From IMG/VR virus record IMGVR_UViG_3300044997_001199, positions 151,331 to 215,330 of that record: a stretch of DNA of 64,000 nucleotides; one strand, written 5' to 3'. Position numbers and translations under genes: made by a program. The notes below the pieces were generated by a model, which did no database searches, was not told the origin of the DNA, and saw only the letters and a program-made list of their open reading frames with translations. How positions within the stretch are numbered: the first letter of the stretch is position 1; the number at the start of each line of letters is the position of its first letter. This document shows positions 42,996-57,689 of this stretch, piece after piece.

Positions 42996-43792
42996 CTGAT
43001 TGGATTTTTCTCAGCAAACACAAGCAGGATCAGTATGTCAACGCATTTGCTCAAGGCAGTGGCGGTGTCATCGTCAATACCAGTGATTTTGACTACTGTG
43101 CCAGTGGTCGTCCCATAGTATTAAGAGGCATACTCAAACACAAAATCATGCAGAGGTGTTGGCAGGATGGTCGTGATTTTTACTACATGGACTCTGGATA
43201 TCTGGGCAATCTGCCCGGGCCGCGTAACCCTCAGGGCTGGAAAACATGGCACAGGATCGTGCCAAACGATCTACAACATCAGGACATCATTGATCGTCCC
43301 GCAGATCGCTGGCAGAGACTAGGCATCCAACCGCAGCCGCGTAGGTACGGTCGGCGCATTGTCCTGGCCTGTCCAGACCAAAAACCCTGTAGATTTTATG
43401 GTATCGATCAGGCAACCTGGATTCGAAACACAGTGAATCAACTGCAGAGTCTCACCGATCGTCCTGTGTTAATACGCGAACGTGCATCTAGCCGCCAACA
43501 ACGCACACAACAAGATCCGCTGAATTGTATGCTGCAGGATGATGTGCATGTCCTGGTGACCTTTAATTCCAACGCTGCCGTGGAAAGCATACTCGCAGGA
43601 GTTCCTGCCATAGTGCTGGCTCCGACGCATGCTGCCAGCCCGGTGGCTGGAACCTGTCTAGAGCAAGTTGAATCGCCACCTTGGCCCGACACAGATAAAT
43701 TATATGCATGGTTGTGTCATCTGTCCTACGGCCAATTTCACAACACCGAGCTGGCCGATGGCACTGCCTATAGGATACTGAATGAAAACTAA
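42992..43792 (+). CDS. Capsule polysaccharide (KpsS/KpsC-like) GT-B protein
   Basis: YMDSGY, TDRP...R.R, LVTFNSNAAVESILAGVP. Confidence 0.65.
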   Translation: MTDWIFLSKHKQDQYVNAFAQGSGGVIVNTSDFDYCASGRPIVLRGILKHKIMQRCWQDGRDFYYMDSGYLGNLPGPRNPQGWKTWHRIVPNDLQHQDIIDRPADRWQRLGIQPQPRRYGRRIVLACPDQKPCRFYGIDQATWIRNTVNQLQSLTDRPVLIRERASSRQQRTQQDPLNCMLQDDVHVLVTFNSNAAVESILAGVPAIVLAPTHAASPVAGTCLEQVESPPWPDTDKLYAWLCHLSYGQFHNTELADGTAYRILNEN

Positions 43793-44780
43793 AATCTACA
43801 TGTTGTCCGGATCAACTGCCGCAGAAAAAAATCTGTTGACAGCGTTCGGTCAAGGCATTCGTCTGCACTGGGAACGAGAGCACGGAAAGATCGCAGTGTT
43901 TGACCACTTTTCTCGCATTGGGCGATGGAGCCATTGTCTAGAGGACAAATCGTTGGAATATGTCTACGATGATTTTTATACTGAATGCGATGTAGCTGTT
44001 ATTTTTGGTAGTTGGAAGCCTAGAGACAAAGGATCGCATGTAACGCGAAACAGTGTGGCCACACAGGCCAAGAGATTTGTAGTCATCGAAACACCGTTGA
44101 TCAATCGGCGCACACACGGCTCAAACGATCATTGGAGAATCGGCGTCAATGGATTTCTCAATGCCGCTGCGGAATGGCCCGTGCTGACCGTTGCCGAGGC
44201 AGACCGTAGGTTGGCCAAGTGGGACGTGAAGTGGGCCGGCTGGCAACGCAACCCCGACGGGCATGTGGTATTGGTGCTGCAACTGCCCGGTGATGCCAGT
44301 CTCAGAGGTCAAGATATCAATGACTGGGCATATCACGCCGTGATAGAGATACGCCGCCACAGCCAACGTTCCATTACCATAAGAAATCATCCACTGTGTA
44401 GCAATCGTGCCTTTGCTGATCACGAAGTCGTGGCAGCAAAATTGGCACTGTCTGGGGTGAGTAATATCAAGTTCAGTGATGGATATTTTGTGCCGTGGCA
44501 GCAGGATCTCGAAGGAGCCTGGTGTACCGTGACCTATACCAGCGGGCTGGCCATTGACAGTGTGCTGGCCGGGGTTCCCACTGTGACCTGCGACCCGGGC
44601 AACTTTGCCTGGGGCATTAGTTCTCAGTCCTTGTCAGACATAGAAAAACCAGTGCGCGCCAACAATCAAACTGTACACAGTTGGCTACGACAACTGGCCG
44701 GGTGTCAATGGAGTGAAGACGAGATAAGATCCGGCCTAGCATGGCAGTACCTCAAGACCATATTGGACAGCATGCCATGA
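43782..44780 (+). CDS. Capsule polysaccharide (KpsS/KpsC-like) GT-B protein
   Basis: LQLPGDASL, IRNHP, VTYTSGLAIDSVLAGVP. Confidence 0.7.
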   Translation: MKTKIYMLSGSTAAEKNLLTAFGQGIRLHWEREHGKIAVFDHFSRIGRWSHCLEDKSLEYVYDDFYTECDVAVIFGSWKPRDKGSHVTRNSVATQAKRFVVIETPLINRRTHGSNDHWRIGVNGFLNAAAEWPVLTVAEADRRLAKWDVKWAGWQRNPDGHVVLVLQLPGDASLRGQDINDWAYHAVIEIRRHSQRSITIRNHPLCSNRAFADHEVVAAKLALSGVSNIKFSDGYFVPWQQDLEGAWCTVTYTSGLAIDSVLAGVPTVTCDPGNFAWGISSQSLSDIEKPVRANNQTVHSWLRQLAGCQWSEDEIRSGLAWQYLKTILDSMP

Positions 44781-45763
44781 TAGTCATGAGTTTTATCAGC
44801 ACCTTGCCCAGCAAGGCTCTACACAACCCCGAGAAGAAAAGTCTCAAATACCAAACCTTGATCAAATTTGCTCAAGGAGTAAATCGCTGCGGTGATCGTG
44901 GCATGATCAGCGTGTCTGCTCAATATGAACCCTGTGATGTGGCCGTGATTCTGGGCTGGGTGCACGACAGTAGCAAATCTGCTCCGCATCTTCGACTGCG
45001 TCGAGAAATCTATGAAGAACAAAAACGCCGCGGAAACCATGTCATTATCGCTGACAGCAGTTTGTTTTTGTATCGTAACCCCGATAATCCCCACTATTAT
45101 CTAAGATACAGTTTCGACGGAGTGTTTCCTGATACTGGGCAATATTGCAACGACCGTCCCAATGTCGATCGGTGGCGTCAAATCAAAGAACACATTGGAT
45201 TAGAATTGCGTGCGTGGAGAAACAGTGGTAACCATGTGTTGTTGTGCTTGCAGAGAGACGGAGGATGGAGCATGGGAGATTTCAAGGTCGTGGATTGGGT
45301 TCTAGAAACCATACGCACTGTGCGAGAATCTAGCAACAGACCCATAGTGATCCGCCCACACCCCGGAGACCGTCGAGCTCGTATTTACTGTGACACGATA
45401 CTGGACCGTGTCCGCAACAAAAGACTGAAAAACGTTACCATGAGTGCGCCGGGCAGGTTGTTGCTGGAAGACCTTGTTGACTGCTGGGCCGTGGTTAATC
45501 ACAATTCCAGCCCAGCCGTGGCCGCAGCAATCGAAGGAATTCCGGTTTTTGTGACCGACCCGCAGCGCAGCCAGGCTGCAGCAGTGTCCAATCTAGATTT
45601 TGCATGCATGGAGAATCCCAGATTGCCCGATCGAGACGAATGGGTACACGGTCTGGCACAGTGCCACTGGAGTCACGAGGATCTGATTACCGGACGCTGC
45701 TGGCAGCACATGAGAAACTACATCGAGCCCGACTCGCTGGATTGGACCGAAGATGAAGATTGA
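44777..45763 (+). CDS. Capsule polysaccharide (KpsS/KpsC-like) GT-B protein
   Basis: CLQRDGGWSM, IRPHP, VVNHNSSPAVAAAIEGIPV. Confidence 0.7.
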   Translation: MIVMSFISTLPSKALHNPEKKSLKYQTLIKFAQGVNRCGDRGMISVSAQYEPCDVAVILGWVHDSSKSAPHLRLRREIYEEQKRRGNHVIIADSSLFLYRNPDNPHYYLRYSFDGVFPDTGQYCNDRPNVDRWRQIKEHIGLELRAWRNSGNHVLLCLQRDGGWSMGDFKVVDWVLETIRTVRESSNRPIVIRPHPGDRRARIYCDTILDRVRNKRLKNVTMSAPGRLLLEDLVDCWAVVNHNSSPAVAAAIEGIPVFVTDPQRSQAAAVSNLDFACMENPRLPDRDEWVHGLAQCHWSHEDLITGRCWQHMRNYIEPDSLDWTEDED

Positions 45764-47096
45764 AGTTATTACCAGTTTTAACCAACACTTCTACGATGTC
45801 ATTGGCCGTGATGCTGTGCGATCCTGGCTACAACATTGGCCGCAGACACTGCGTCTTACCTGTTACGTAGAACAGTGCAAGATTCCCGCCAATGATCGCA
45901 CACCCACCGTTGACTTTGATCGGTTTGATGACCGATACTGGCAGTTCCAACAGGATCCTCTGTTGAAATCGCGTGTCAAAATCTTTGCAAAAAAGGCCTG
46001 GTCATTCATGCATGCAGCTCAAAATTCCACTGCAGATCGTGTGATCTGGATCGATGCCGATGTGATCACCACACAGACTATGTGTCTGGAATTCTTGCAA
46101 AGTATCATGCCTGATTCAGTATTGAGCACCCATCTCGGTGTGACTTACGAGACCGACGGGCGCGGCAGATCAGGACCCTGGTTGGTTCCTGAAACTGGAT
46201 TCTTTGCGATCAATCGGCGTCATGAAAAATTTCAAGAGTTTGTCGATGAGTATCAACGAAGATATCTCCATCGCGACTGCGCCGATCTACGTAGATTCTA
46301 TGACAATGATGTATATGGTGCAGCACTGACCACTGTTGCTGCAACTGTGCTGGACCTCTGCGCTGAACTAAAAAAATCTTACAAAACTCCATTGCGCCAC
46401 ACTGTGTTGGGCTCATATCTTTGTCACTATAAGTCCAAACACAACAAAGCGCAGTACATGAACACACTCGACGCTGTGCATTGCCCGGATATCAATCAAA
46501 ACTATCTCGTACTAGGACACGGACGCACCGGTAGTCTCCTGATCTTTGACATCCTCAAGCAACTGTGTCCTGGCCACCACTCATACTTTTATGCAGCCGA
46601 TAAAAAAATACATGATGGTAAAACTGATCTGCCATTGGCAGATCAGTGCCTTGAGTCTCCCTGGGTCATGCATAGTCATGAAATAAAATCCTATGTTGGT
46701 CTCACTGACCAAGAAAAAAACAACACCGTGGTGATACATTCTCAGAGACGCAACAAGTTTGATTGTGCTGTGAGTCATCTGACTGCGAGACACACCGGGG
46801 TTTTTTACCAGGACGAATACCGTGATTCTCCGGATCCAGGCAACGCATTTGATGTCCGCCCTGACGATTTTTGGGATCATATACATTTCTGCCAAGAGTG
46901 GAAAAAGCGTTTCAACCGCCGTGTTGTCAAACCAGACAAATACAAAAAGTTAGTTACAATTGATTTTGACGAATTGATTTCGTCCCCGGCAACGGTTGTC
47001 TCGGGATCACTTGATTTGCCGATGCCAGTGTCACTGTCCAAAATCAACTGGCAATCAAAAAAAAATGAAAAATCGTCCCGAGCATCTCATCCTTAA
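45753..47096 (+). CDS. GT-A glycosyltransferase fused to sulfotransferase-like domain; probable frameshift near the 3' end
   Basis: VIWIDADV, ETGF, HYK; then LVLGHGRTGS, RRN.FD.AVS; A9 run at 47057-47065. Confidence 0.7.
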   Translation: MKIEVITSFNQHFYDVIGRDAVRSWLQHWPQTLRLTCYVEQCKIPANDRTPTVDFDRFDDRYWQFQQDPLLKSRVKIFAKKAWSFMHAAQNSTADRVIWIDADVITTQTMCLEFLQSIMPDSVLSTHLGVTYETDGRGRSGPWLVPETGFFAINRRHEKFQEFVDEYQRRYLHRDCADLRRFYDNDVYGAALTTVAATVLDLCAELKKSYKTPLRHTVLGSYLCHYKSKHNKAQYMNTLDAVHCPDINQNYLVLGHGRTGSLLIFDILKQLCPGHHSYFYAADKKIHDGKTDLPLADQCLESPWVMHSHEIKSYVGLTDQEKNNTVVIHSQRRNKFDCAVSHLTARHTGVFYQDEYRDSPDPGNAFDVRPDDFWDHIHFCQEWKKRFNRRVVKPDKYKKLVTIDFDELISSPATVVSGSLDLPMPVSLSKINWQSKKNEKSSRASHP

Positions 47097-47277
47097 CTAT
47101 CAGGAACTGATTGATCAATATCGTCATGGGCACGACCCGACAATTAAGAAATATCAACAGTTTAAAAGATAGTTTCGCGTGAGGGCATGATCTAGATCAG
47201 CGCAATGGTTTTGTAAAAAAATAGATCCAAACTCATTGTTAAAACAATCAACAACCAGTATAATAAAAGAAAAGTCA

Positions 47278-47354
47278 GCCCAGGTGATGGAATTGGTATA
47301 CGTGTCGGATTCAAAATCCGAATTTTGTGGGTTCGAGTCCCGCCCAGGGCACCA
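47278..47354 (+). tRNA. tRNA-Leu(CAA), short variable arm
   Basis: GCCCAGG/CCAGGGC acceptor (one A:A mismatch), TCGGA-TTCAAAA-TCCGA, GTTCGAGTCC, CCA end. Confidence 0.85.
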
Positions 47355-47361
47355 GATCAAT

Positions 47362-47435
47362 CGCGGGTTGGGCCAGTGGTTGGCCGAAGGTCTCATAAAC
47401 CTTACAGAGTGGTTCGATTCCACTACCCGCATCCA
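47362..47435 (+). tRNA. tRNA-Met(CAT), initiator-like
   Basis: CGCGGGT/ACCCGCA with C1:A72 mismatch, AAGGT-CTCATAA-ACCTT, AGTGG-TTCGATT-CCACT, CCA. Confidence 0.8.
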
Positions 47436-47452
47436 GACCAAGGAGTAGATGC

Positions 47453-47677
47453 ATGAATTGTTATCCAGCACAAGGTGCTCGGGGCGTTCTTGTACGCACG
47501 GTTACCGACGACGTTGTGCTACCAATCTACAACGAGATTGGTGATTTTGTTGACTTTGATCTCGCACATTCCGACCTGTCTGTCACTGTGACCGATCCTG
47601 ATGCATATTTTTATCAGCATACCGACGGTAAACTTGTGCTAGATCACAGTCCTGAGATGCTGAGAATTAAATACTAG
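47453..47677 (+). CDS. Hypothetical protein
   Basis: AAGGAG SD, 74 aa. Confidence 0.6.
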   Translation: MNCYPAQGARGVLVRTVTDDVVLPIYNEIGDFVDFDLAHSDLSVTVTDPDAYFYQHTDGKLVLDHSPEMLRIKY

Positions 47678-47694
47678 TTTACAGGAGTACACTA

Positions 47695-48003
47695 ATGTTA
47701 ATTGCAATCACTATCGTTGTTGCCGCGATAATTTTTTACGTGGCATATACCAAATCCAGACACAATAAGATTAAGGATTTTCCGGAATTGATTGACCAAG
47801 TCTCGGTCGTGGCTGATGCAACCTCACAACCGGCCATGCCGGAACCTGAGGTAGAAGTTGTAGCGGAACCTGCTGCAGAGATTTTGGCTGACGTCGGGAC
47901 TCAGACTTCCACCAACAAAAGACCCGCACGTAACAAAGCAAAGGTTCAACCCGTCGATCCCGCCGCAGCCAGTCGTCGACCCCGCGCTCGTGCCAAACAG
48001 TAA
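47695..48003 (+). CDS. Membrane-anchored protein with basic tail
   Basis: N-terminal TM, acidic middle, K/R-rich end; TAAATA (47668-47673) and AGGAG. Confidence 0.65.
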   Translation: MLIAITIVVAAIIFYVAYTKSRHNKIKDFPELIDQVSVVADATSQPAMPEPEVEVVAEPAAEILADVGTQTSTNKRPARNKAKVQPVDPAAASRRPRARAKQ

Positions 48004-48004
48004 T

Positions 48005-48080
48005 CTGCCTGTAGCTCAGCCGGAAGAGCAACGGCCTTCTAAGCCGTCGGCCGGGGGTTCGAATCCCTCCAGGCAGGCCA
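48005..48080 (+). tRNA. tRNA-Arg(TCT)
   Basis: CTGCCTG/CAGGCAG, ACGGC-CTTCTAA-GCCGT, GTTCGAATCC, CCA. Confidence 0.92.
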
Positions 48081-48085
48081 TCGAT

Positions 48086-48122
48086 GCGCTTGTAGCTTAA
48101 GGGTTAAAGTAGCGGGCTCTTT
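48086..48122 (+). pseudogene. 5' half of a tRNA (probably Lys-CTT) truncated at the anticodon loop
   Basis: GCGCTTG-TA-GCTT-AAGGGTTA-AAGT-A-GCGGG-CTCTT followed by AT-rich sequence. Confidence 0.55.
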
Positions 48123-48225
48123 TATTTTATTTTTATAATTATTAAAAAGTGACAGATATGCCCACCCTAAAAGTTTATAATAATTTGTAAAGAAATATTA
48201 CTATACACGTAAAAATAATTTTTAT

Positions 48226-48297
48226 GAGCCTATAGCTCAACAGTAAAGCGTGCCACTCATAATGGCTTGAGTCTTAGTTCGATTCCGGGTGGGCTCA
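48226..48297 (+). tRNA. tRNA-Ile2/Met(CAT)-like, degenerate, no encoded CCA
   Basis: GAGCCTA/TGGGCTC, GCCA-CTCATAA-TGGC, weak T stem; acceptor extended by 10 further perfect pairs. Confidence 0.65.
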
Positions 48298-48337
48298 TAA
48301 AAATTACTTTCTTCAGTTAGTTGTTATAACATTGAAT

Positions 48338-48420
48338 GGGAGTGTGGTGAAATTGGTAAACACATCTGATTTAAGATCAGACGCCGCGGCTTGAGAGTTC
48401 GAATCTCTCCACTCCTACCA
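48338..48420 (+). tRNA. tRNA-Leu(TAA)
   Basis: GGGAGTG/CACTCCT, TCTGA-TTTAAGA-TCAGA, variable arm, GAGAG-TTCGAAT-CTCTC, CCA. Confidence 0.92.
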
Positions 48421-48497
48421 AAATATATACAAGTAATATTGGAGTAACACATTAACTCAGGCATGCTTGAATTTAATATTCAAGAAATTAAAGATTT

Positions 48498-48983
48498 TTA
48501 GTTATCTGGGCTACACCCTGCAGATACGAAGCTTAATTCATGTATCATTCTGTGGGGTATTCCTTTGCCTCTTCTCATTAACCATTGATTTTGTACGCTG
48601 TATGCCACAAACTCTGTTCTAGCATTTTCTATACAAGTACCTTTGTTACCAGGAACTATAGTTCCGTCTAAGAATTGCAGATGGTGGACGAATTCATGCA
48701 CAAAGTAACTTGCATTAAAATCATCTTGCGCATCCCACGTGTCTCTTAAAAATATTTTACCGTTAGAGTAAAGACCTATAACATGAAAATCAGGCGGGCA
48801 ATTACCCCCGCAAACCTGAATGTTAATTTCTTTACCATTAATAAAAACTATTTCGGGCAGTTTATACTCTAAATTAGGAGAGTATATTTCTCTTGCTTCT
48901 TTTGCCAGAACCTCTAAATCATCTATGATATCAGCAAAAGCAGATTGAGATGCTATTAAAAAAAGTAAGAATAGTTTTTTCAT
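48498..48983 (-). CDS. Secreted zincin-like (HExxH) protein
   Basis: Signal peptide MKKLFLLFLIASQSAFA, VHEFVHHLQ, E..AY..Q; AT-rich. Confidence 0.7.
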   Translation of the reverse strand: MKKLFLLFLIASQSAFADIIDDLEVLAKEAREIYSPNLEYKLPEIVFINGKEINIQVCGGNCPPDFHVIGLYSNGKIFLRDTWDAQDDFNASYFVHEFVHHLQFLDGTIVPGNKGTCIENARTEFVAYSVQNQWLMRRGKGIPHRMIHELSFVSAGCSPDN

Positions 48984-49244
48984 TTGATTTATTTTTTGAT
49001 AGATAATATCAGGTATTAAATGATACAAGTAGGCAAATTAATATGATGCAAAAATATATAGCAGAACTTGATGAGATAGCAAACATAAAACGATAAATGG
49101 ACTAGCAAATTGAAAGATAGGACCATGATTACATTAAACAGTTTGTTGCGTTAACCGAAGAACAGAACGCTGGTGTCATCGCCGCGTCCGAGAACAAATC
49201 AGCCAAAGCCAGTCGTCGACCCCGCGCTCGTGCCAAACAGTAAT

Positions 49245-49320
49245 CTGCCTGTAGCTCAGCCGGAAGAGCAATGGACTTAAAATCCATCCAGTACGGGCTC
49301 GAATCCCGCCACTCGCACCA
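49245..49320 (+). pseudogene. Chimeric tRNA: Arg 5' portion + Leu(TAA) anticodon arm and 3' half
   Basis: 5' CTGCCTG cannot pair with 3' CACTCGC; ATGGA-CTTAAAA-TCCAT anticodon arm; ACCA end. Confidence 0.8.
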
Positions 49321-49357
49321 TATCATAAATAGTGTTGTAGTAACACTCGGAGTAAAC

Positions 49358-49831
49358 ATGCTTAAACTTAATATTGAAGAAGTTAAAGCATTTATAGATT
49401 CACAAAGCAAAGAAACAAGAATTTATATCGGGTGCGACTCTGAACGCTTTAGACACAATAACGTATGGTGGGCCGAGTATACTGTGGCAGTGGTGATCCA
49501 TATGGATGGGCGTCACGGCTGTAGGATTTTTGGCGAAGTTACCCGAGAAAGAGACTATGACCAACGCAGAGATCGACCCAGCATGCGTCTCATGAACGAA
49601 GTTCACAAGGCTAGCGAGATGTTTCAGCGTCTGGCGCTGGTGCTAGCGGATCGTCCAGTGGAAGTACATCTTGACATCAATCCCAACGAGATCCACGGAT
49701 CTAACTGTATAATCCAGCAGGCCATTGGCTACATACGAGGTACATGCAATGTGATTCCCATGATCAAACCTCGGGCATTTGCTGCCAGCTATGCGGCAGA
49801 TCGGCTCAAATCTCTACGTTTATCAGCTTGA
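49358..49831 (+). CDS. RNase H-like YkuK (DUF458) family protein
   Basis: IYIGCDS, RLMNEV, EVHLDIN, IKP.AFAASYAAD. Confidence 0.85.
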   Translation: MLKLNIEEVKAFIDSQSKETRIYIGCDSERFRHNNVWWAEYTVAVVIHMDGRHGCRIFGEVTRERDYDQRRDRPSMRLMNEVHKASEMFQRLALVLADRPVEVHLDINPNEIHGSNCIIQQAIGYIRGTCNVIPMIKPRAFAASYAADRLKSLRLSA

Positions 49832-49867
49832 TCGTGGTTGTGTTGCATTGACCTACTGAATATTGCA

Positions 49868-50134
49868 ATGCAACAAAAAACTTTTCTCATCGTAATAAGA
49901 CGTACCGGGCGAGACGAAGTTTTCCGCCCCAGTGACTGGGCCGAACGTCTTTGCAACATGATCACAGTGTTTGACCATGGCAACAAATTGGTGGCCAGTT
50001 ACCGACGAAGAATGGGCGTATCTCAATCAACAGTCACTGCCTGTGCCAAAATCATTGACTACAAATTGTTATCAATGTACTATTTGACTTTACAACAAGC
50101 ATCAGAGGATACCAATGTCTCGTATTACCAGTGA
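49868..50134 (+). CDS. DUF3579-like protein (C-terminus may be degenerate)
   Basis: FRPSDWAERLC signature. Confidence 0.65.
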   Translation: MQQKTFLIVIRRTGRDEVFRPSDWAERLCNMITVFDHGNKLVASYRRRMGVSQSTVTACAKIIDYKLLSMYYLTLQQASEDTNVSYYQ

Positions 50135-50342
50135 ACTTGCAGTAAATGCAATAGGCAGTCGTTATGATTTGGTGCTGATCGCATCGCGCAGGGCAAGAGA
50201 ACTGCGCCGGGGCTGGACACCCAAGGTAAAAAGCCCGTATGGACCCTTGGTAGTGGCGCTGGCCGAAATTGAAAAAGGTGTAGTCGGGCGGGAGTACCTC
50301 AACAAGCCGGCCAATATCGGTCGTCACGAAACCCCTGAATGA
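50115..50342 (+). CDS. rpoZ: RNA polymerase omega subunit
   Basis: MSRITSE.A...IGSRYDLVLIASRRAREL..G..P, P.V.AL.EI..G. Confidence 0.88.
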   Translation: MSRITSELAVNAIGSRYDLVLIASRRARELRRGWTPKVKSPYGPLVVALAEIEKGVVGREYLNKPANIGRHETPE

Positions 50343-51169
50343 TCAATCAGATTCACGGTCGACCAATCGTGATGTTTTATCCACCGTTTGGAGGTGCCAA
50401 GTTCATTACCAACTGCTTGGCTTTGAGCAAATATTGTGTGCACATTGATCGCGGAGCCATGCAGCATCTCATGCAAAATCCGTCGGACTATAAGTACCGA
50501 CAGCAGCTTAGCCTGAGTACGATACCGCAGGGCTCTGAGATAGAATCCGCGAGACTCGGAGCCACATGGCGTGATCAATATGAACTCAACGACAGTTCGA
50601 TTTTTGGTCGCAGTGGGCTAGAACCAGGTAAAACATATGATTGGTGGTTGGTACAACAGGTACTCAGACAACAACTCGATTTCTTTCTGATCGCGCACTG
50701 GCTTCCGAGATTACAAGAGCTGTTGAGTTATTTTCCTCAATCACGAATCGTGAGATTGGTGAACTTTGAAAAATTCTGGAACATAGCGCAAAAATTCAAA
50801 GCCTGTGTTGAACTCAATCCACCGTGGCATGAATGCATTGTTCACAACGATCAATCTCGTGTTTACCAACAACTTCAAGGACCCGATTGGCCCAGTTGGG
50901 AACTCTTCGAATCATACGGATACGACATTGTTGAATTGTCTCGATATCACCCAGTCGACCAGCCCATTGTCGAGGAAATCAAAAGTTTTTACCCATGGTA
51001 TCAACTTGCTCAACCGTTGACTGTATTTGATGTAGATAACACTATTTTTTTCCGACAAAAATTTATATACAAAATGTACGACCTATATCAATGGCTGTGT
51101 TATAATGACTTTGATCCAAAAACCATTGGTATCATGTGGGACCGATATGCAGAGTTTCACGATTTTTAG
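50339..51169 (+). CDS. Hypothetical protein, sulfotransferase-like family; paralog of 31406..32281
   Basis: MFYPPFGGAKFITNCLALS; LQGPDWPSW. Confidence 0.5.
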   Translation: MINQIHGRPIVMFYPPFGGAKFITNCLALSKYCVHIDRGAMQHLMQNPSDYKYRQQLSLSTIPQGSEIESARLGATWRDQYELNDSSIFGRSGLEPGKTYDWWLVQQVLRQQLDFFLIAHWLPRLQELLSYFPQSRIVRLVNFEKFWNIAQKFKACVELNPPWHECIVHNDQSRVYQQLQGPDWPSWELFESYGYDIVELSRYHPVDQPIVEEIKSFYPWYQLAQPLTVFDVDNTIFFRQKFIYKMYDLYQWLCYNDFDPKTIGIMWDRYAEFHDF

Positions 51170-51179
51170 AACTAGATTT

Positions 51180-51254
51180 GCGGGTATGGTGTAGTGGTTG
51201 CGCCCTGACCTTCCAAGCTAGAGAGGATGGGTTCGATTCACACTACCCGTTCCA
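51180..51254 (+). tRNA. tRNA-Gly(TCC), possibly degenerate
   Basis: GCGGGTA/TACCCGT, CTTCCAA loop, GTTCGATT, TCCA end; mismatches in anticodon and T stems. Confidence 0.75.
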
Positions 51255-51276
51255 ACTTTTAATGTTAAGGAATACC

Positions 51277-51513
51277 ATGATCAGAACCAGTACAATTTGT
51301 TACGATCCTTCCAATTTCGATCATCGTCATGATTTTTATCGTTTACTAAAATCTGGAACATTTACTTGGTGCAAAAACCGCTATGCACTGAAAGGACAGT
51401 ATGGTGATGTACTGAACATGATGTTAGACCTCACTGTGCGATATTATGCAGAGCAAGAATTTGGTCCGCTGGAATCGGTTAACATCGATACACCAAATAA
51501 AGTAATGACATGA
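51277..51513 (+). CDS. Hypothetical protein
   Basis: AAGGA SD, coupled to the next gene. Confidence 0.55.
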   Translation: MIRTSTICYDPSNFDHRHDFYRLLKSGTFTWCKNRYALKGQYGDVLNMMLDLTVRYYAEQEFGPLESVNIDTPNKVMT

Positions 51514-51908
51514 CCAAGATTTTTGTCAATGGCACATTCGATGTGCTGCATCTAGGACATCTGGCTCTGTTGGAATATGCGCACAGTCTAGGCACTGTGA
51601 TGGTTGCCATTGACAGCGATGCCAGGATCAAACAATTGAAAGGTGCCCAAAGACCTGTAAATACTCTGGTAGAACGCATTACCATGCTAGAGGCCCTGCG
51701 TTGTGTAGACAGTGTGCGCGTATTTGATACCGATCAAGATCTGATCGACATAATACGTGCGTATCAACCCAACATCATGGTCAAAGGCTCTGACTATCAA
51801 GGACGTAACATCATTGGCGCCGAACACTGTGACCACATAGACTTTTTTCCGAGACTCGATGATTACTCAACCACTAAAAAAATTCAAAATATTGCTCATA
51901 GGCGATGA
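51510..51908 (+). CDS. Heptose-1-phosphate nucleotidyltransferase-like (HldE domain II / HldC)
   Basis: NGTFDVLHLGH, DSD..IKQLKG..RPVN, VKGSDY, YSTT. Confidence 0.85.
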   Translation: MTKIFVNGTFDVLHLGHLALLEYAHSLGTVMVAIDSDARIKQLKGAQRPVNTLVERITMLEALRCVDSVRVFDTDQDLIDIIRAYQPNIMVKGSDYQGRNIIGAEHCDHIDFFPRLDDYSTTKKIQNIAHRR

Positions 51909-52629
51909 TTGTGTAGACATCTATCGCTATGGTACGGTGAATCGACTGTGCCCCGAGGCTCCTGTGCCAATTTTTGAACCCAGCCACGACGAAACTCGAC
52001 CTGGCATGGCCAACAATGTGGCACAGAACTTTCTAAGCCTGGGGTGCGAGGTCACTACTATGCTGGGCGATGCCAGCACAAAGATACGCCTCATTGATAT
52101 CCGCAGCGGTCAACAGGTCTTGCGTCTAGACCAGAATGTTCAATCGTCTCCGATCAAACTGCACTGTCGTATACCTCAGACTTTTGATGCCGTGGTTATT
52201 TCAGACTACAACAAAGGCGCCGTGGATCATCGTCTCATACGAGAGATACGCAAAGAATTTGTTGGTCCGGTATTCATCGATACCAAGAAGTCCGAGTTGG
52301 CCAAATTCAACGGATGCATTTTAAAAATCAACGAACGCGAGTTCAACGATCGCAAAAGCATATGCGATCAATTGATCGTAACTCTAGGCGATCGTGGTGC
52401 AAGGTATCACGATCACGGCACCATCACTGATTTTGCTCCGCATCGAGTGGAAGTGAGCGATGTGTGCGGAGCCGGTGACACCTTCCTGGCTGCCTTGGTC
52501 TACCAATACCTTGTTACCGGAGAAATCGCCCAGGCCATTGAATTTGCGATGTCTGCTGCGGCAGTCACTGTACAACATCTAGGCGTGTATGCGCCCACAC
52601 TGGAGGAAATTAATGCGATTTCGTGGTGA
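51859..52629 (+). CDS. Heptose-7-phosphate kinase-like PfkB (HldE domain I / HldA)
   Basis: LIGD..VD.Y.YG.V.RLCPEAPVP, ISDYNKG, DVCGAGDTF. Confidence 0.88.
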   Translation: MITQPLKKFKILLIGDDCVDIYRYGTVNRLCPEAPVPIFEPSHDETRPGMANNVAQNFLSLGCEVTTMLGDASTKIRLIDIRSGQQVLRLDQNVQSSPIKLHCRIPQTFDAVVISDYNKGAVDHRLIREIRKEFVGPVFIDTKKSELAKFNGCILKINEREFNDRKSICDQLIVTLGDRGARYHDHGTITDFAPHRVEVSDVCGAGDTFLAALVYQYLVTGEIAQAIEFAMSAAAVTVQHLGVYAPTLEEINAISW

Positions 52630-52990
52630 AGTCATCAAAGGATGGGGGTCGGAGAAGATCTGGGTCACCAACGATCTCTACTGCGGTAAATTCATGACAT
52701 TCCACAGTGGCGCAAAATTCAGCATGCATTTTCATGCACACAAAGACGAGACATGGTATGTGATGTCTGGTAGATTCACTGTGCGCACTATCAATACCCG
52801 GGATGCTTCGCATCACACCCGGGAGCTTGGTACAGGGGATGTGTGGCACAATCCGCCCTTGTTGCCGCACCAGTTGATTTGTCACGAAGCTGGCACCATT
52901 ATCGAAGTCAGCACCGCTGATTCTGTAGAAGACAACTATCGCGTGGAGGCCGGGGACAGCCAGAAATACCACTGTAATGATTACACATGA
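52613..52990 (+). CDS. Cupin sugar isomerase/epimerase
   Basis: KGWG.E, FSMHFH..KDETWYV, PHQL, EVST.D...DNYR. Confidence 0.8.
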   Translation: MRFRGEVIKGWGSEKIWVTNDLYCGKFMTFHSGAKFSMHFHAHKDETWYVMSGRFTVRTINTRDASHHTRELGTGDVWHNPPLLPHQLICHEAGTIIEVSTADSVEDNYRVEAGDSQKYHCNDYT

Positions 52991-56971: not shown

Positions 56972-57689
56972 ACACATCGGACGCCACGGCGATCGCAAGG
57001 TCGCTATCGTGTTTCGTGAAATCCCAGGCGAAGATCATATGTGCCTGGTAATTTATCCCGAAGTATTGCCTAGTCATATTCATGATTGCATTATGAAAGT
57101 GTTGGAAAGCCCAGCCGCTCAAGCCGAAACTGTGCTGGCCAATGCGCTTCACAGAAATCTTCTGCCCGATGGTCGCGTGATACTGGAGGCATTGCACCGC
57201 GAAGGCATGCTGAAGAAAATAGCGGCCAATCAAGTGATCGTGACTCCCAATGCTACCAGCAGTGTCAAGCTGGACGAACTCAACCGACTGGTAAGGGAAA
57301 TGGAATCAGGGTCTGATGCTGCTCGCAGGCTAGCAGAACTCGACGCCAATGCTGGCATCGTGGATCCCAAGACCAAGCGCCGTGCCGAAGCCGAATTTAA
57401 ATCGAGACAGCAACAGTCCGCAGCCGTGACCGCAGATTCCAACTCGGCGCTGGATGACAAAACACTGGCAGCCAACATGCTGGCTCAGGCCAAGCGCATG
57501 GAGGTCGAAGCCAAAGGGCTCATTGCCGAGGCTGCTCGCATGAAAAAAGATGCCGAACGTATGTTCCCCGGAGTGAATGTCGATGGAGCCACAGTGGAAT
57601 CTGCTGCCACTGTAGAATCTGCTGCCACAGACACTGCACCCAAGGCACGTGGACGGAACAAAACGGTGACTTCAGATGTCGTTCAGTGA
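56964..57689 (+). CDS. Hypothetical protein
   Basis: AAGGAG SD, MLKHIGRH start, coiled-coil C-terminal half. Confidence 0.65.
   Translation: MLKHIGRHGDRKVAIVFREIPGEDHMCLVIYPEVLPSHIHDCIMKVLESPAAQAETVLANALHRNLLPDGRVILEALHREGMLKKIAANQVIVTPNATSSVKLDELNRLVREMESGSDAARRLAELDANAGIVDPKTKRRAEAEFKSRQQQSAAVTADSNSALDDKTLAANMLAQAKRMEVEAKGLIAEAARMKKDAERMFPGVNVDGATVESAATVESAATDTAPKARGRNKTVTSDVVQ

What the first reader, a model, noticed from the sequence alone, without database searches (positions are those of the whole stretch)
47967..49320. AT-rich tRNA island between 65-bp direct repeats that leaves a chimeric tRNA and resupplies the lost anticodon
Seen: exact repeats 1240 bp apart. The left copy continues as intact tRNA-Arg(TCT); the right copy joins the Arg 5' portion to a Leu(TAA) 3' portion with an unpairable acceptor. 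Inside are a half tRNA, a sharp drop in GC, a CAT tRNA, an intact Leu(TAA) and a secreted HExxH gene; no integrase. Inference: tRNA-mediated capture of foreign DNA in which the incoming Leu(TAA) compensates for the broken one; the segment could excise via the repeats.
Basis: partly seen in the sequence, partly recalled or inferred. Interest (0 to 1): 0.6.

Follow-up and report, generated by a model that had tools for sequence, protein, structure and literature searches.

The report
Foreign tRNA patch in lake phage
A large lake-water phage carries about 1 kb of AT-rich DNA from an unrelated phage living in the same samples, spliced into its tRNA gene cluster and leaving broken gene stubs at the joins. 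This is a clean natural example of ordinary phage mosaicism rather than a new kind of mobile element.

Summary
A 65-nt exact direct repeat lies at 47967-48031 and 49207-49271. The left copy runs into an intact tRNA-Arg(TCT). The right copy is fused to the 3' two-thirds of a tRNA-Leu(TAA) and cannot form an acceptor stem. Between them is a 33% GC segment in a 49.5% GC phage contig of 215 kb.

The segment is real. Independent k=31 contigs from two lake-water runs cover every unique junction at the same depth as the flanks, and another JGI assembly is 100% identical over 12.3 kb.

The donor lineage can be named. Window 48315-49072 is 94-96% identical to contigs of a 37% GC phage from the same and a sister sample. 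That phage's DNA polymerase is only 26% identical to the resident's.

The island is a patchwork of scars. It holds a tRNA-Met stub cut in the anticodon, a 12-codon stub of the RNaseH-like gene (already present in the donor) and a start-less fragment of a possible homologue of the upstream gene.

Best reading: homeologous or illegitimate recombination between co-infecting phages inside a hypervariable tRNA array. I found no integrase, resolvase or homing endonuclease in or beside it. Compensation by the incoming Leu(TAA) is plausible but untested. Excision through the repeats could not be tested.

The parts
47695..48003 (+). Gene A: 102-aa ORF with an N-terminal hydrophobic helix and a basic tail (...ASRRPRARAKQ*). 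Its last 36 nt form the left part of the repeat.
   Evidence: No homologue other than itself. The exact protein occurs on 4 JGI contigs.
47967..48031 (+). Left copy of the 65-nt exact direct repeat (3' end of gene A, a 1-nt spacer and tRNA-Arg positions 1-27).
48005..48080 (+). Intact tRNA-Arg(TCT), the only one on the contig.
   Evidence: ARAGORN; Rfam 69.4 bits; cloverleaf-type fold.
48085..48118 (+). 5' stub of a tRNA-Met(CAT)-type gene, cut after C34 of the anticodon. It corresponds to the Met(CAT) that follows Arg(TCT) in relatives L021 and L099.
   Evidence: Alignment A2. No 3' partner nearby. No group I intron hit.
48119..48224 (.). Very AT-rich spacer (18% GC) of unknown origin. One low-depth contig in run X1 skips 48082-48208.
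   Evidence: joint 48081>48209, depth 9.8, side 29.
48225..48298 (+). tRNA with anticodon CAT (Met/Ile2 type), island copy.
   Evidence: Rfam 47.6 bits.
48338..48420 (+). Intact type-II (long variable arm) tRNA-Leu(TAA), the only Leu(TAA) on the 215-kb contig. Donor contig L141 carries the same gene with 3 substitutions.
48463..48501 (+). 12-codon remnant (MLEFNIQEIKDF*) of an RNaseH-like (PF04308) gene. It is orthologous to the start of the resident gene at 49358. The same remnant is present in the donor lineage.
   Evidence: Alignment A1; A4; variant contigs span it.
48498..48983 (-). DUF6647 protein of 161 aa: signal-peptide-like N-terminus, HExxH plus a downstream conserved Glu, and a zincin-like predicted fold. 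GC3 is 28% against 52% for the genome.
   Evidence: Pfam; homologues; alignment A7; model pLDDT 86.5; only weak zincin hits; codon usage.
48315..49072 (.). Segment 94-96% identical to contigs L141 and L066 of an AT-rich (37% GC) phage from the same and a sister sample. Identity stops abruptly at 49072.
49073..49120 (.). 48-nt AT-rich filler of unknown origin between the donor segment and the gene A* fragment.
49121..49243 (+). Gene A* fragment: 40 codons without a start (DHDYIKQFVALTEEQNAGVIAASENKSAK + ASRRPRARAKQ*). It resembles gene A residues 22-45 only weakly. Its last 36 nt belong to the repeat.
   Evidence: score 29 against shuffles 19.1 +/- 3.5, maximum 32. No homologue found.
49207..49271 (+). 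Right copy of the 65-nt exact direct repeat.
49245..49320 (+). Chimeric tRNA pseudogene: tRNA-Arg positions 1-27 joined to the anticodon arm (TAA), 5-nt variable loop, T-arm and 3' acceptor strand of a type-I tRNA-Leu(TAA). The acceptor stem cannot form.
   Evidence: Rfam partial match 41.5 bits; not called by ARAGORN; alignment with intact 77-nt Leu(TAA) genes (A3); fold.
49358..49831 (+). Resident RNaseH-like gene (PF04308, phrog_11311), the conserved neighbour of tRNA arrays in this phage group.

Best explanation
The locus is a recombination scar in the hypervariable tRNA array of an uncultured lake-water jumbo phage (215-kb contig, 49.5% GC).

Shown: about 0.8-1.1 kb was copied in from a distantly related AT-rich phage lineage (contigs L141 and L066). 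That lineage co-occurs in the same samples and carries the homologous module tRNA(CAT) - tRNA-Leu(TAA) - RNaseH-like remnant - DUF6647. The resident phage's own type-I tRNA-Leu(TAA) survives only as the 3' part of a chimeric pseudogene.

Inferred: the transfer happened during co-infection. Because the two genomes share little beyond tRNA genes and the start of the RNaseH-like gene, the joins formed by homeologous or illegitimate recombination at or beside tRNA sequences. This left a tRNA-Met stub, a start-less fragment of gene A* and a chimeric Arg/Leu tRNA.

Inferred: the chimera most simply arose as a one-tRNA-length deletion between adjacent Arg(TCT) and Leu(TAA) genes at their similar D-arms.

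Inferred: the 65-nt repeat is the identical tail shared by two homologous 'gene A - tRNA-Arg' modules. It is not a target duplication or an att site.

Consequence: the phage now depends on the imported type-II Leu(TAA) for that anticodon. That dependence may be why the patch is kept, but it is untested.
For: 1. The sequence is real.
- Logan k=31 contigs with 0 differences cover flank, island and flank at matching depth. X1: 28.3 / 24 / 34.6 / 28.9 / 28.3 / 19.5 / 27.9. X2: 39.3 / 41.9 / 30 / 48.2 / 44.2 / 43.7 / 40.5.
- Those contigs bridge tRNA-Arg into the AT-rich DNA (X2 record 10, 48002-48369). They also bridge the AT-rich DNA into the A* fragment and repeat (records 7 and 15, 49040-49236), and the repeat into the Leu 3' part and RNaseH-like gene (records 8 and 16).
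- A 163-kb JGI contig is 100% identical over 12,309 nt. All four contigs that carry gene A have the same neighbouring genes.

2. The donor lineage is identified.
- L066 is 95.7% identical over window 48679-49072. L141 is about 94% identical over 48315-48518, and its DUF6647 protein is 94% identical over the full length.
- Both donor contigs run on into orf63, dCMP deaminase, sHSP and polB at 37% GC.
- The donor polB is 86% identical to that of L065 but only 26% identical to the resident's.
- The donor variant is present in the same runs at depth 15-18, with the substitutions seen in L141.

3. The imported module is orthologous to the resident one. The island's Leu(TAA) 3' end, spacer and first 12 codons of an RNaseH-like gene align at about 75% with the chimera's 3' end, spacer and the resident RNaseH-like gene.

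4. The stubs match intact genes in relatives.
- The tRNA-Met stub matches the Met(CAT) that follows Arg(TCT) in L021 and L099.
- The chimera's 3' part matches intact 77-nt Leu(TAA) genes, whose D-arm resembles that of Arg.
- Arg(TCT) directly precedes Leu(TAA) in L064/L065 (followed by the RNaseH-like gene) and in L033.

5. Composition marks the segment as foreign. DUF6647 has GC3 of 28% against 52% for the genome, uses TTA for 8 of 14 Leu codons and AGA for 6 of 6 Arg codons.

6. No mobility gene was found. There is no tyrosine or serine recombinase on the contig. There is no homing endonuclease in or near the island; the only GIY-YIG ORF lies about 190 kb away. A RecA/UvsX-type recombinase is present.

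7. There is a family precedent. In L008, compared with L009, a cassette replaced the Leu(TAA) and Met(CAT) alleles and left a 24-nt 5' tRNA stub.
Against: - No near relative of the resident phage is available. The best RNaseH-like match is 72% identical at the protein level, so the state before the event is unknown and the order and number of events are inferred.
- The homology between gene A and A* is weak (alignment z about 2.9; 7 of 13 nt match just left of the repeat). An exact 65-nt tract next to such diverged sequence needs an extra assumption, either a recent conversion or a crossover.
- The left boundary of donor-derived DNA is not fixed. It lies somewhere between 48002 and 48315, and the resident's full tRNA-Arg may itself be of donor origin.
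- No record shown crosses the whole 65-nt repeat. The pairing of its two entries and two exits therefore rests on the JGI assemblies.
Confidence: 0.68

Rival explanations
1. Homing-endonuclease-initiated gene conversion. A free-standing endonuclease of the donor lineage cut the resident tRNA array during co-infection. Repair then copied the donor's tRNA alleles and neighbouring genes, and the endonuclease gene itself was not transferred or was later lost. This would be a special case of the best explanation, with a defined trigger.
For: - T4 SegB sits in the tRNA cluster, recognises a site that includes the tRNA T-psi-C motif, and drives inheritance of the surrounding tRNA genes in mixed infection (PMC2330249).
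- In relatives L008, L019 and L078 a cassette with an HNH-like ORF plus new Leu(TAA) and Met(CAT) alleles replaces the resident alleles. It leaves a 24-nt 5' stub cut at the end of the D-arm, close to the position of the chimera joint here.
- That cassette's Leu(TAA) is the closest fetched relative of the island's Leu(TAA): 86.5%, against about 78% for the allele without the cassette.
Against: - No HNH, GIY-YIG or other endonuclease ORF lies in or next to the island.
- The donor sequence in hand (L141, L066) shows none either, although its left side is missing.
- The HNH match in L008 is below Pfam's cut-off (18.4 against 21.4 bits).
- Clean homing leaves crossovers in homologous flanks, not stubs.
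Confidence: 0.15
2. One reading: a discrete, repeat-flanked 1.24-kb tRNA cassette. It entered by recombination at the 65-nt repeat (Campbell-type, from a circle) and can leave the same way, using the phage's own RecA/UvsX-type recombinase rather than an integrase.
For: - The flanking repeats are exact and 65 nt long.
- An intact tRNA is regenerated at one junction and a displaced fragment lies at the other.
- A RecA-family recombinase is encoded on the contig.
- The k=31 graph is equally compatible with an empty site plus a circle.
Against: - No integrase or resolvase is present.
- The unit contains resident-like GC-rich DNA (the A* fragment) and donor scars, so it does not look like a coherent element.
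- Donor contigs carry the module as ordinary chromosome sequence continuing into orf63, dCMP deaminase and polB. No repeat copy is seen on the part of the donor that was recovered.
- The model requires that the chimeric tRNA already existed.
- Island depth equals flank depth in two runs.
- All four assemblies that carry gene A have the filled form, and no alternative context was found for the RNaseH-like gene.
Confidence: 0.08
3. Metagenome misassembly: the assembler hopped between the resident phage and the co-occurring AT-rich phage at shared tRNA sequence.
For: - The contig is a metagenome assembly.
- The donor-like phage is in the same samples at roughly half the depth and shares exact 30-mers of tRNA-Arg.
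- Donor contigs L066 and L141 end inside the shared region.
Against: - The island's own sequence differs from the co-occurring donor at 4-6% of positions. It forms separate contigs with 0 differences at the resident's depth (28 and 40), while the donor variant runs at 15-18.
- Every unique junction is bridged by independent k=31 contigs in two runs.
- Four JGI contigs have the same gene neighbourhood, and one of them is 100% identical over 12.3 kb.
- A chimera would have to enter and leave the donor within 1 kb in the same way each time.
Confidence: 0.05
4. Split tRNA with an intron: the half tRNA at 48085-48118 is exon 1 of a tRNA interrupted in its anticodon loop by a group I intron that carries the island's genes.
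For: The stub ends exactly inside the anticodon (after C34), where bacterial tRNA group I introns sit (established knowledge).
Against: - No group I intron or any other structured-RNA match at E<=1 in 46500-52000.
- No matching 3' exon: the complementary acceptor strand CAAGCGCA is absent downstream. The only plus-strand hit, at 57491, shows no tRNA-like sequence around it.
- The 18% GC spacer after the stub resembles no fetched sequence, and further on the island matches the donor's ordinary intergenic and genic DNA.
Confidence: 0.02

Closest known systems
Mosaic module exchange between tailed phages by illegitimate or homeologous recombination (the Hendrix-type mosaicism model; hyperplastic regions of T4-like phages)
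   Same: - Identity to another lineage changes abruptly, from 94-96% to none at 49072.
- The composition jumps.
- Truncated gene remnants lie at the joins.
- No mobility gene is present.
- Donor and recipient share a habitat.
   Different: - The joins fall inside tRNA genes and produce a chimeric tRNA.
- A 65-nt exact direct repeat brackets the patch.
- The donor lineage is caught in the same samples.
- Donor and recipient are very distant (polB 26% identical) yet share an orthologous tRNA/RNaseH-like module that served as the landing site.
T4 SegB: a free-standing GIY-YIG homing endonuclease in the tRNA gene cluster (PMC2330249)
   Same: The tRNA cluster is the unit exchanged between related phages in co-infection. 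Donor tRNA alleles replace recipient ones.
   Different: No endonuclease gene is present here. The SegB mechanism was shown by crosses, whereas here it is only an inference. The partners are far more diverged than T4 and T2L.
tRNA-gene-targeting integrative elements (tyrosine-integrase islands and prophages with att repeats)
   Same: Direct repeats that include part of a tRNA gene flank AT-rich foreign DNA. An intact tRNA lies at one junction and a fragment at the other.
   Different: - There is no integrase.
- The host is a phage genome.
- The repeat covers the 5' part of the tRNA plus 36 nt of upstream coding sequence, not the usual 3' part.
- The fragment is fused to a different tRNA.
- The interior is not a coherent element.
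The HNH-like cassette in relatives L008, L019 and L078 compared with L009, L017 and L018
   Same: It occurs in the same phage group and the same Leu(TAA)/Met(CAT)/RNaseH-like neighbourhood. The incoming DNA brings replacement tRNA alleles and leaves a 5' tRNA stub.
   Different: That cassette carries an HNH-like ORF and has no flanking exact repeat. The window's island carries DUF6647 instead.

Membership tests
Integrase-mediated tRNA-targeting integrative element | Tyrosine or serine recombinase gene in the element or the genome | tested here: not met
   PF00589 and PF00239 give no match on the 215-kb contig, and the controls rang. No such ORF lies in 48081-49206.
Integrase-mediated tRNA-targeting integrative element | Identical att core repeats at both ends that include part of the tRNA, with the tRNA regenerated at one end | tested here: met
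   A 65-nt exact repeat is present and tRNA-Arg is intact at the left copy. However, the repeat holds the 5' part of the tRNA plus upstream coding sequence, which is atypical.
Integrase-mediated tRNA-targeting integrative element | Excised circle and empty site detectable | not testable with these tools
   Only k=31 Logan contigs were available. A 65-nt repeat makes the empty and filled forms share all their k-mers.
Free-standing homing endonuclease cassette (SegB-like) | Endonuclease gene (GIY-YIG, HNH or LAGLIDADG) inside or adjacent to the transferred segment | tested here: not met
   There is none in 47000-50400. The only GIY-YIG ORF is at contig position 9272-9517, and the HNH hits are below the cut-off and distant.
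Free-standing homing endonuclease cassette (SegB-like) | Donor alleles of flanking genes co-converted into the recipient | tested here: met
   The donor-type Leu(TAA), spacer, RNaseH-like remnant and DUF6647 are all present.
Free-standing homing endonuclease cassette (SegB-like) | Cleavage of the recipient allele but not the donor allele | not testable with these tools
   Needs an enzyme and a cleavage assay.
Phage mosaic joint from illegitimate or homeologous recombination | Sharp boundary of high identity to a different phage lineage | tested here: met
   Identity is 95.7% up to 49072 and none beyond. The backbones are unrelated (polB 26% identical).
Phage mosaic joint from illegitimate or homeologous recombination | Compositional discontinuity and foreign codon usage | tested here: met
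   33% against 49.5% GC, and GC3 of 28% against 52%.
Phage mosaic joint from illegitimate or homeologous recombination | Truncated genes at the joins | tested here: met
   The tRNA-Met stub, the chimeric tRNA and the start-less A* fragment. The RNaseH-like remnant is an older scar inherited from the donor.
Phage mosaic joint from illegitimate or homeologous recombination | The parental (pre-event) arrangement is known | tested here: inconclusive
   No close relative of the resident phage was found.
Group I intron in a tRNA anticodon loop | Intron RNA fold and a 3' exon that completes the tRNA | tested here: not met
   No Rfam intron match at E<=1 and no 3' exon.

The most novel reading that the evidence does not exclude
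tRNA arrays of these lake jumbo phages evolve by exchange of tRNA-anchored cassettes. Endonuclease-triggered or UvsX-mediated events would use the conserved 5' halves of tRNA genes as landing pads. They would overwrite resident tRNA alleles with foreign ones (here a type-I Leu(UAA) replaced by a type-II Leu(UAA)) and carry passenger genes such as the secreted DUF6647 zincin between very distant phage lineages. On this reading the 65-nt-repeat unit is a reversible, recombinase-free insertion that can be gained and lost in mixed infections.
Probability: 0.12. Interest if true: 0.6.

Novelty: new member of a known kind. Interest (0 to 1): 0.35.

Why it matters
The locus gives a well-documented natural case of gene flow between two very different phages that share a lake, and the donor lineage is visible in the same samples. 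It shows that tRNA genes and their conserved neighbours can act as the short homology that lets distant phage genomes exchange DNA. Such events destroy and replace tRNA genes, which bears on how phage tRNA repertoires turn over. It is also a useful caution for annotation. A tRNA island bracketed by direct repeats looks like an integrative element, yet here it is better read as a set of recombination scars.

Tried and rejected
- Looked for a close relative of the resident phage that would show an empty site. I used the RNaseH-like protein in viral and metagenome contigs (best 72% identity), gene A in viral contigs (none) and the word search (only itself). I also tried the A* fragment (none) and an exact look-up of the RNaseH-like protein (only the same context, plus a Logan contig that starts at the repeat). 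No pre-insertion state was found.\n- Looked for the left side of the donor. Exact patterns from the Met-Leu spacer and from the donor-type Leu(TAA) found nothing in viral contigs. L141 ends at the equivalent of window 48315.\n- Tested the group I intron or split-tRNA idea for the half tRNA and rejected it.\n- Tested tandem duplication with later divergence as the origin of the island. Rejected because of the 94-96% identity to an unrelated AT-rich phage.\n- Searched the INPHARED phage collection with blastn. Only generic tRNA matches came back.\n- DUF6647 function: no PHROG match, no PDB sequence match, and only weak Foldseek hits (E>=0.08), almost all to zincin-type metallohydrolases.
Full report
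**Context.** The window is the last 64 kb of a 215,330-nt IMG/VR viral contig. The contig is linear, CheckV rates it about 61% complete, and its GC content is 49.5%, so it is a metagenome-assembled jumbo phage. Thirteen public lake-water metagenome runs hold the stretch or part of it. The contig carries 14 tRNA genes and a tmRNA. The locus lies in a tRNA array next to an RNaseH-like gene (PF04308, phrog_11311). More than 60 related viral and metagenome contigs have dense and highly variable tRNA arrays around that same gene.

**Observation.**
- The direct repeat is exact over 65 nt, at 47967-48031 and 49207-49271.
- The left copy comprises the last 36 nt of ORF 47695-48003 (gene A), a 1-nt spacer and positions 1-27 of an intact tRNA-Arg(TCT) at 48005-48080.
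- The right copy continues into an anticodon arm with TAA, a 5-nt variable loop, a T-arm and a 3' acceptor strand ending in ACCA.
- The 5' strand CUGCCUG pairs with the 3' strand CACUCGC at only 4 of 7 positions. Rfam matches only model positions 6-65, ARAGORN does not call the gene, and the MFE fold is no better than shuffled sequence.
- Aligned with intact 77-nt tRNA-Leu(TAA) genes of relatives such as L106, L003 and L007, the 3' part clearly belongs to that type-I Leu(TAA) family. The D-arm of that family resembles the Arg D-arm, which gives a plausible crossover point.

Between the repeats lie:
- a tRNA-Met-type 5' stub (48085-48118);
- an 18% GC spacer (48119-48224);
- tRNA(CAT) (48225-48298);
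- an intact long-arm tRNA-Leu(TAA) (48338-48420);
- a 12-codon remnant of an RNaseH-like gene (48463-48501);
- a DUF6647 gene on the minus strand (48498-48983);
- 48 nt of filler (49073-49120);
- a start-less 40-codon ORF fragment, called A* here (49121-49243).

**Is it an assembly artefact?** The evidence says no, with one caveat.
- Logan's independent k=31 contigs from two runs lie on the stretch with 0 differences, and island depth matches flank depth. X1: flanks 28.3 and 27.9, island pieces 24 to 34.6. X2: flanks 39.3 and 40.5, island pieces 30 to 48.2.
- Those contigs bridge tRNA-Arg into the AT-rich DNA (48002-48369), the AT-rich DNA into the A* fragment and the repeat (49040-49236), and the repeat into the Leu 3' part and the RNaseH-like gene (from 49242).
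- They break only inside the repeat, as expected when the repeat (65 nt) is longer than k.
- A 163-kb contig from JGI sample 3300044956 is 100% identical over 12,309 nt including the island. All four contigs that carry gene A have the same neighbouring genes.
- The caveat: no record shown crosses the whole repeat. The pairing of its entries and exits rests on the JGI assemblies. An empty site or an excised circle cannot be seen or excluded with k=31 contigs.

**Origin of the AT-rich DNA.**
- The DUF6647 protein led to contig L066 (sample 3300044957). It is 95.7% identical at the nucleotide level to window 48679-49072, and the identity ends abruptly at 49072.
- It also led to contig L141, from the same sample 3300044956 as the resident contig. 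L141 carries the full DUF6647 gene (94% protein identity). It continues through the same RNaseH-like remnant, spacer and Leu(TAA) up to the equivalent of window 48315.
- On the other side both contigs run into orf63, dCMP deaminase, a small heat-shock protein and a family-B DNA polymerase, at 37% GC.
- That polymerase is 86% identical to the one in L065 but only 26% identical to the resident phage's polymerase. Donor and recipient are therefore only distantly related.
- The substitutions and small deletions of L141 are the variant seen at depth 15-18 in runs X1 and X2. The donor lineage therefore co-occurs with the resident phage.
- In the more distant donor relatives L064 and L065 the order is Arg(TCT) - Leu(TAA) - RNaseH-like - Gly(TCC) - DUF6647 (convergent) - orf63 - dCMP deaminase - sHSP, with polB following in L065. 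The island is thus a piece of the orthologous neighbourhood.
- Loss of most of the RNaseH-like gene happened in the donor lineage before the transfer.
- Codon usage agrees with a foreign origin: DUF6647 has GC3 of 28% against 52% for the genome, 8 of 14 Leu codons are TTA and 6 of 6 Arg codons are AGA.

**The scars.**
- The stub at 48085-48118 aligns with the 5' half of the tRNA-Met(CAT) that follows Arg(TCT) in L021 and L099. It stops after C34 of the anticodon.
- I found no 3' partner and no intron-like RNA.
- The A* fragment shares its last 12 codons exactly with gene A. Upstream of that, similarity is only weak at the protein level: score 29 against shuffles of 19.1 +/- 3.5. Seven of the 13 nt just left of the repeat match.
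- This suggests two diverged homologous 'gene A - tRNA-Arg' modules whose tails are identical. It is not proof.
- Neither A nor A* has any homologue in the databases searched.

**Mechanism.** I found no tyrosine or serine recombinase on the contig and no homing endonuclease in or near the island. A RecA/UvsX-type recombinase is encoded.

The most economical account has two ordinary events.
1. A deletion of one tRNA length between adjacent Arg(TCT) and type-I Leu(TAA) genes, at their similar D-arms, gave the chimeric pseudogene in front of the RNaseH-like gene. That adjacency exists in relatives.
2. During a mixed infection, donor DNA replaced the stretch between the anticodon of the resident tRNA-Met and the 5' part of A*, through illegitimate or homeologous joins.

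On this account the 65-nt repeat is shared ancestry or a conversion tract between the two modules, not a product of the insertion. The order of events, the exact left boundary of donor DNA (anywhere from 48002 to 48315) and the origin of 48119-48224 and 49073-49120 remain open.

A homing-endonuclease trigger is a serious variant. T4 SegB does exactly this in the T4 tRNA cluster (PMC2330249). In relatives L008, L019 and L078 an HNH-like cassette has overwritten the Leu(TAA) and Met(CAT) alleles and left a 24-nt tRNA stub. That cassette's Leu(TAA) is the closest fetched relative of the island's copy. No endonuclease gene is present here, however.

**Function.**
- The island's Leu(TAA) is the only gene with that anticodon on the contig. 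The Arg(TCT) at 48005-48080, just outside or at the edge of the island, is likewise the only one.
- The resident phage uses TTA for 6.3% of Leu codons (282 codons in 164 long ORFs) and AGA for 12.7% of Arg codons.
- Replacement of the broken Leu(TAA) is therefore a reasonable reason for keeping the patch. It is an inference, and about 40% of the genome may be missing.
- DUF6647 has a signal-peptide-like N-terminus (judged by eye), an invariant HExxH and conserved Glu residues downstream.
- Its model is confident (pLDDT 86.5). The only structural neighbours are weak (E>=0.08), and almost all are zincin-type metallohydrolases, namely M1 and collagenase catalytic domains, YbeY, abylysin and Wss1. 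I call it a small secreted zincin-like protein of unknown substrate.

**Verdict.** The DNA is foreign, the joins involve tRNA genes, and the lost anticodon is present again on the island. The evidence favours recombination scars in a mosaic hot spot over a discrete, excisable tRNA island. This is a new and unusually well-documented member of a known kind of event, namely phage mosaicism at tRNA clusters, and it is of moderate interest.

Noticed in passing
L008:5025-5990 compared with L009:5760-5990 (also L019 and L078 compared with L017, L018 and L063): In one set of near-identical relatives a cassette of about 700 nt replaces the resident alleles. It holds an HNH-like ORF (254 aa; PF01844 18.4 bits, below the cut-off) plus different tRNA-Leu(TAA) and tRNA-Met(CAT) alleles. 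It leaves a 24-nt 5' stub of the resident Leu(TAA). This looks like endonuclease-linked tRNA allele replacement.
   Followed up: partly
window 47278-47354; L003:5642-5718, L006:4476-4720, L007:5782-5858, L010:3176-3252, L032:2034-2110, L042:5900-5976, L106:3249-3325: A conserved family of 77-nt type-I tRNAs (5-nt variable loop, A73, encoded CCA) with Leu anticodons TAA, CAA or TAG sits alongside ordinary long-arm Leu tRNAs in these phages. Type-I tRNALeu charged by LeuRS is known in Streptomyces (PMC6614811). Their amino-acid identity here is inferred from the anticodon only.
   Followed up: partly
L006:2509-2603, L021:2754-2847, L025:5634-5728, L088:2938-3032, L095:3889-3983: ARAGORN-95-nt 'tRNA-Ile(TAT)' genes in many relatives, which is far longer than a normal Ile tRNA. 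This may be an insertion or intron, or a long extra arm.
   Followed up: no
L039:3147-3223: A tRNA with anticodon CTA (labelled Pyl by ARAGORN) in a related phage contig, which may be an amber suppressor.
   Followed up: no
window 49838-50342: Directly after the RNaseH-like gene the phage encodes a DUF3579 protein and a 75-aa RNA polymerase omega/Rpb6-like protein (PF01192, 44.8 bits).
   Followed up: no
window 43782-47096 and 51510-52990: The tRNA array is flanked by sugar-modification genes. On one side are three large ORFs, one with a sub-threshold glycosyltransferase-2 match. On the other are an RfaE-like cytidylyltransferase, a PfkB kinase and a cupin, which suggests nucleotide-sugar synthesis by the phage.
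   Followed up: no
window 47840-47887: Gene A contains a 24-nt imperfect tandem repeat (71% identity) in its acidic, proline-rich middle part. That part is absent from the A* fragment.
   Followed up: no
runs X1 and X2, around window 48002, 48421, 48483 and 49073 (loose ends and joints): Further lineages in the same lake samples share short exact stretches of this locus in other contexts. One has AT-rich DNA directly upstream of an identical tRNA-Arg 5' part. One has Leu(TAA) followed directly by an Arg-like tRNA. Others continue differently before 48483 and after 49072. The array is a recombination hot spot across several co-occurring phages.
   Followed up: partly
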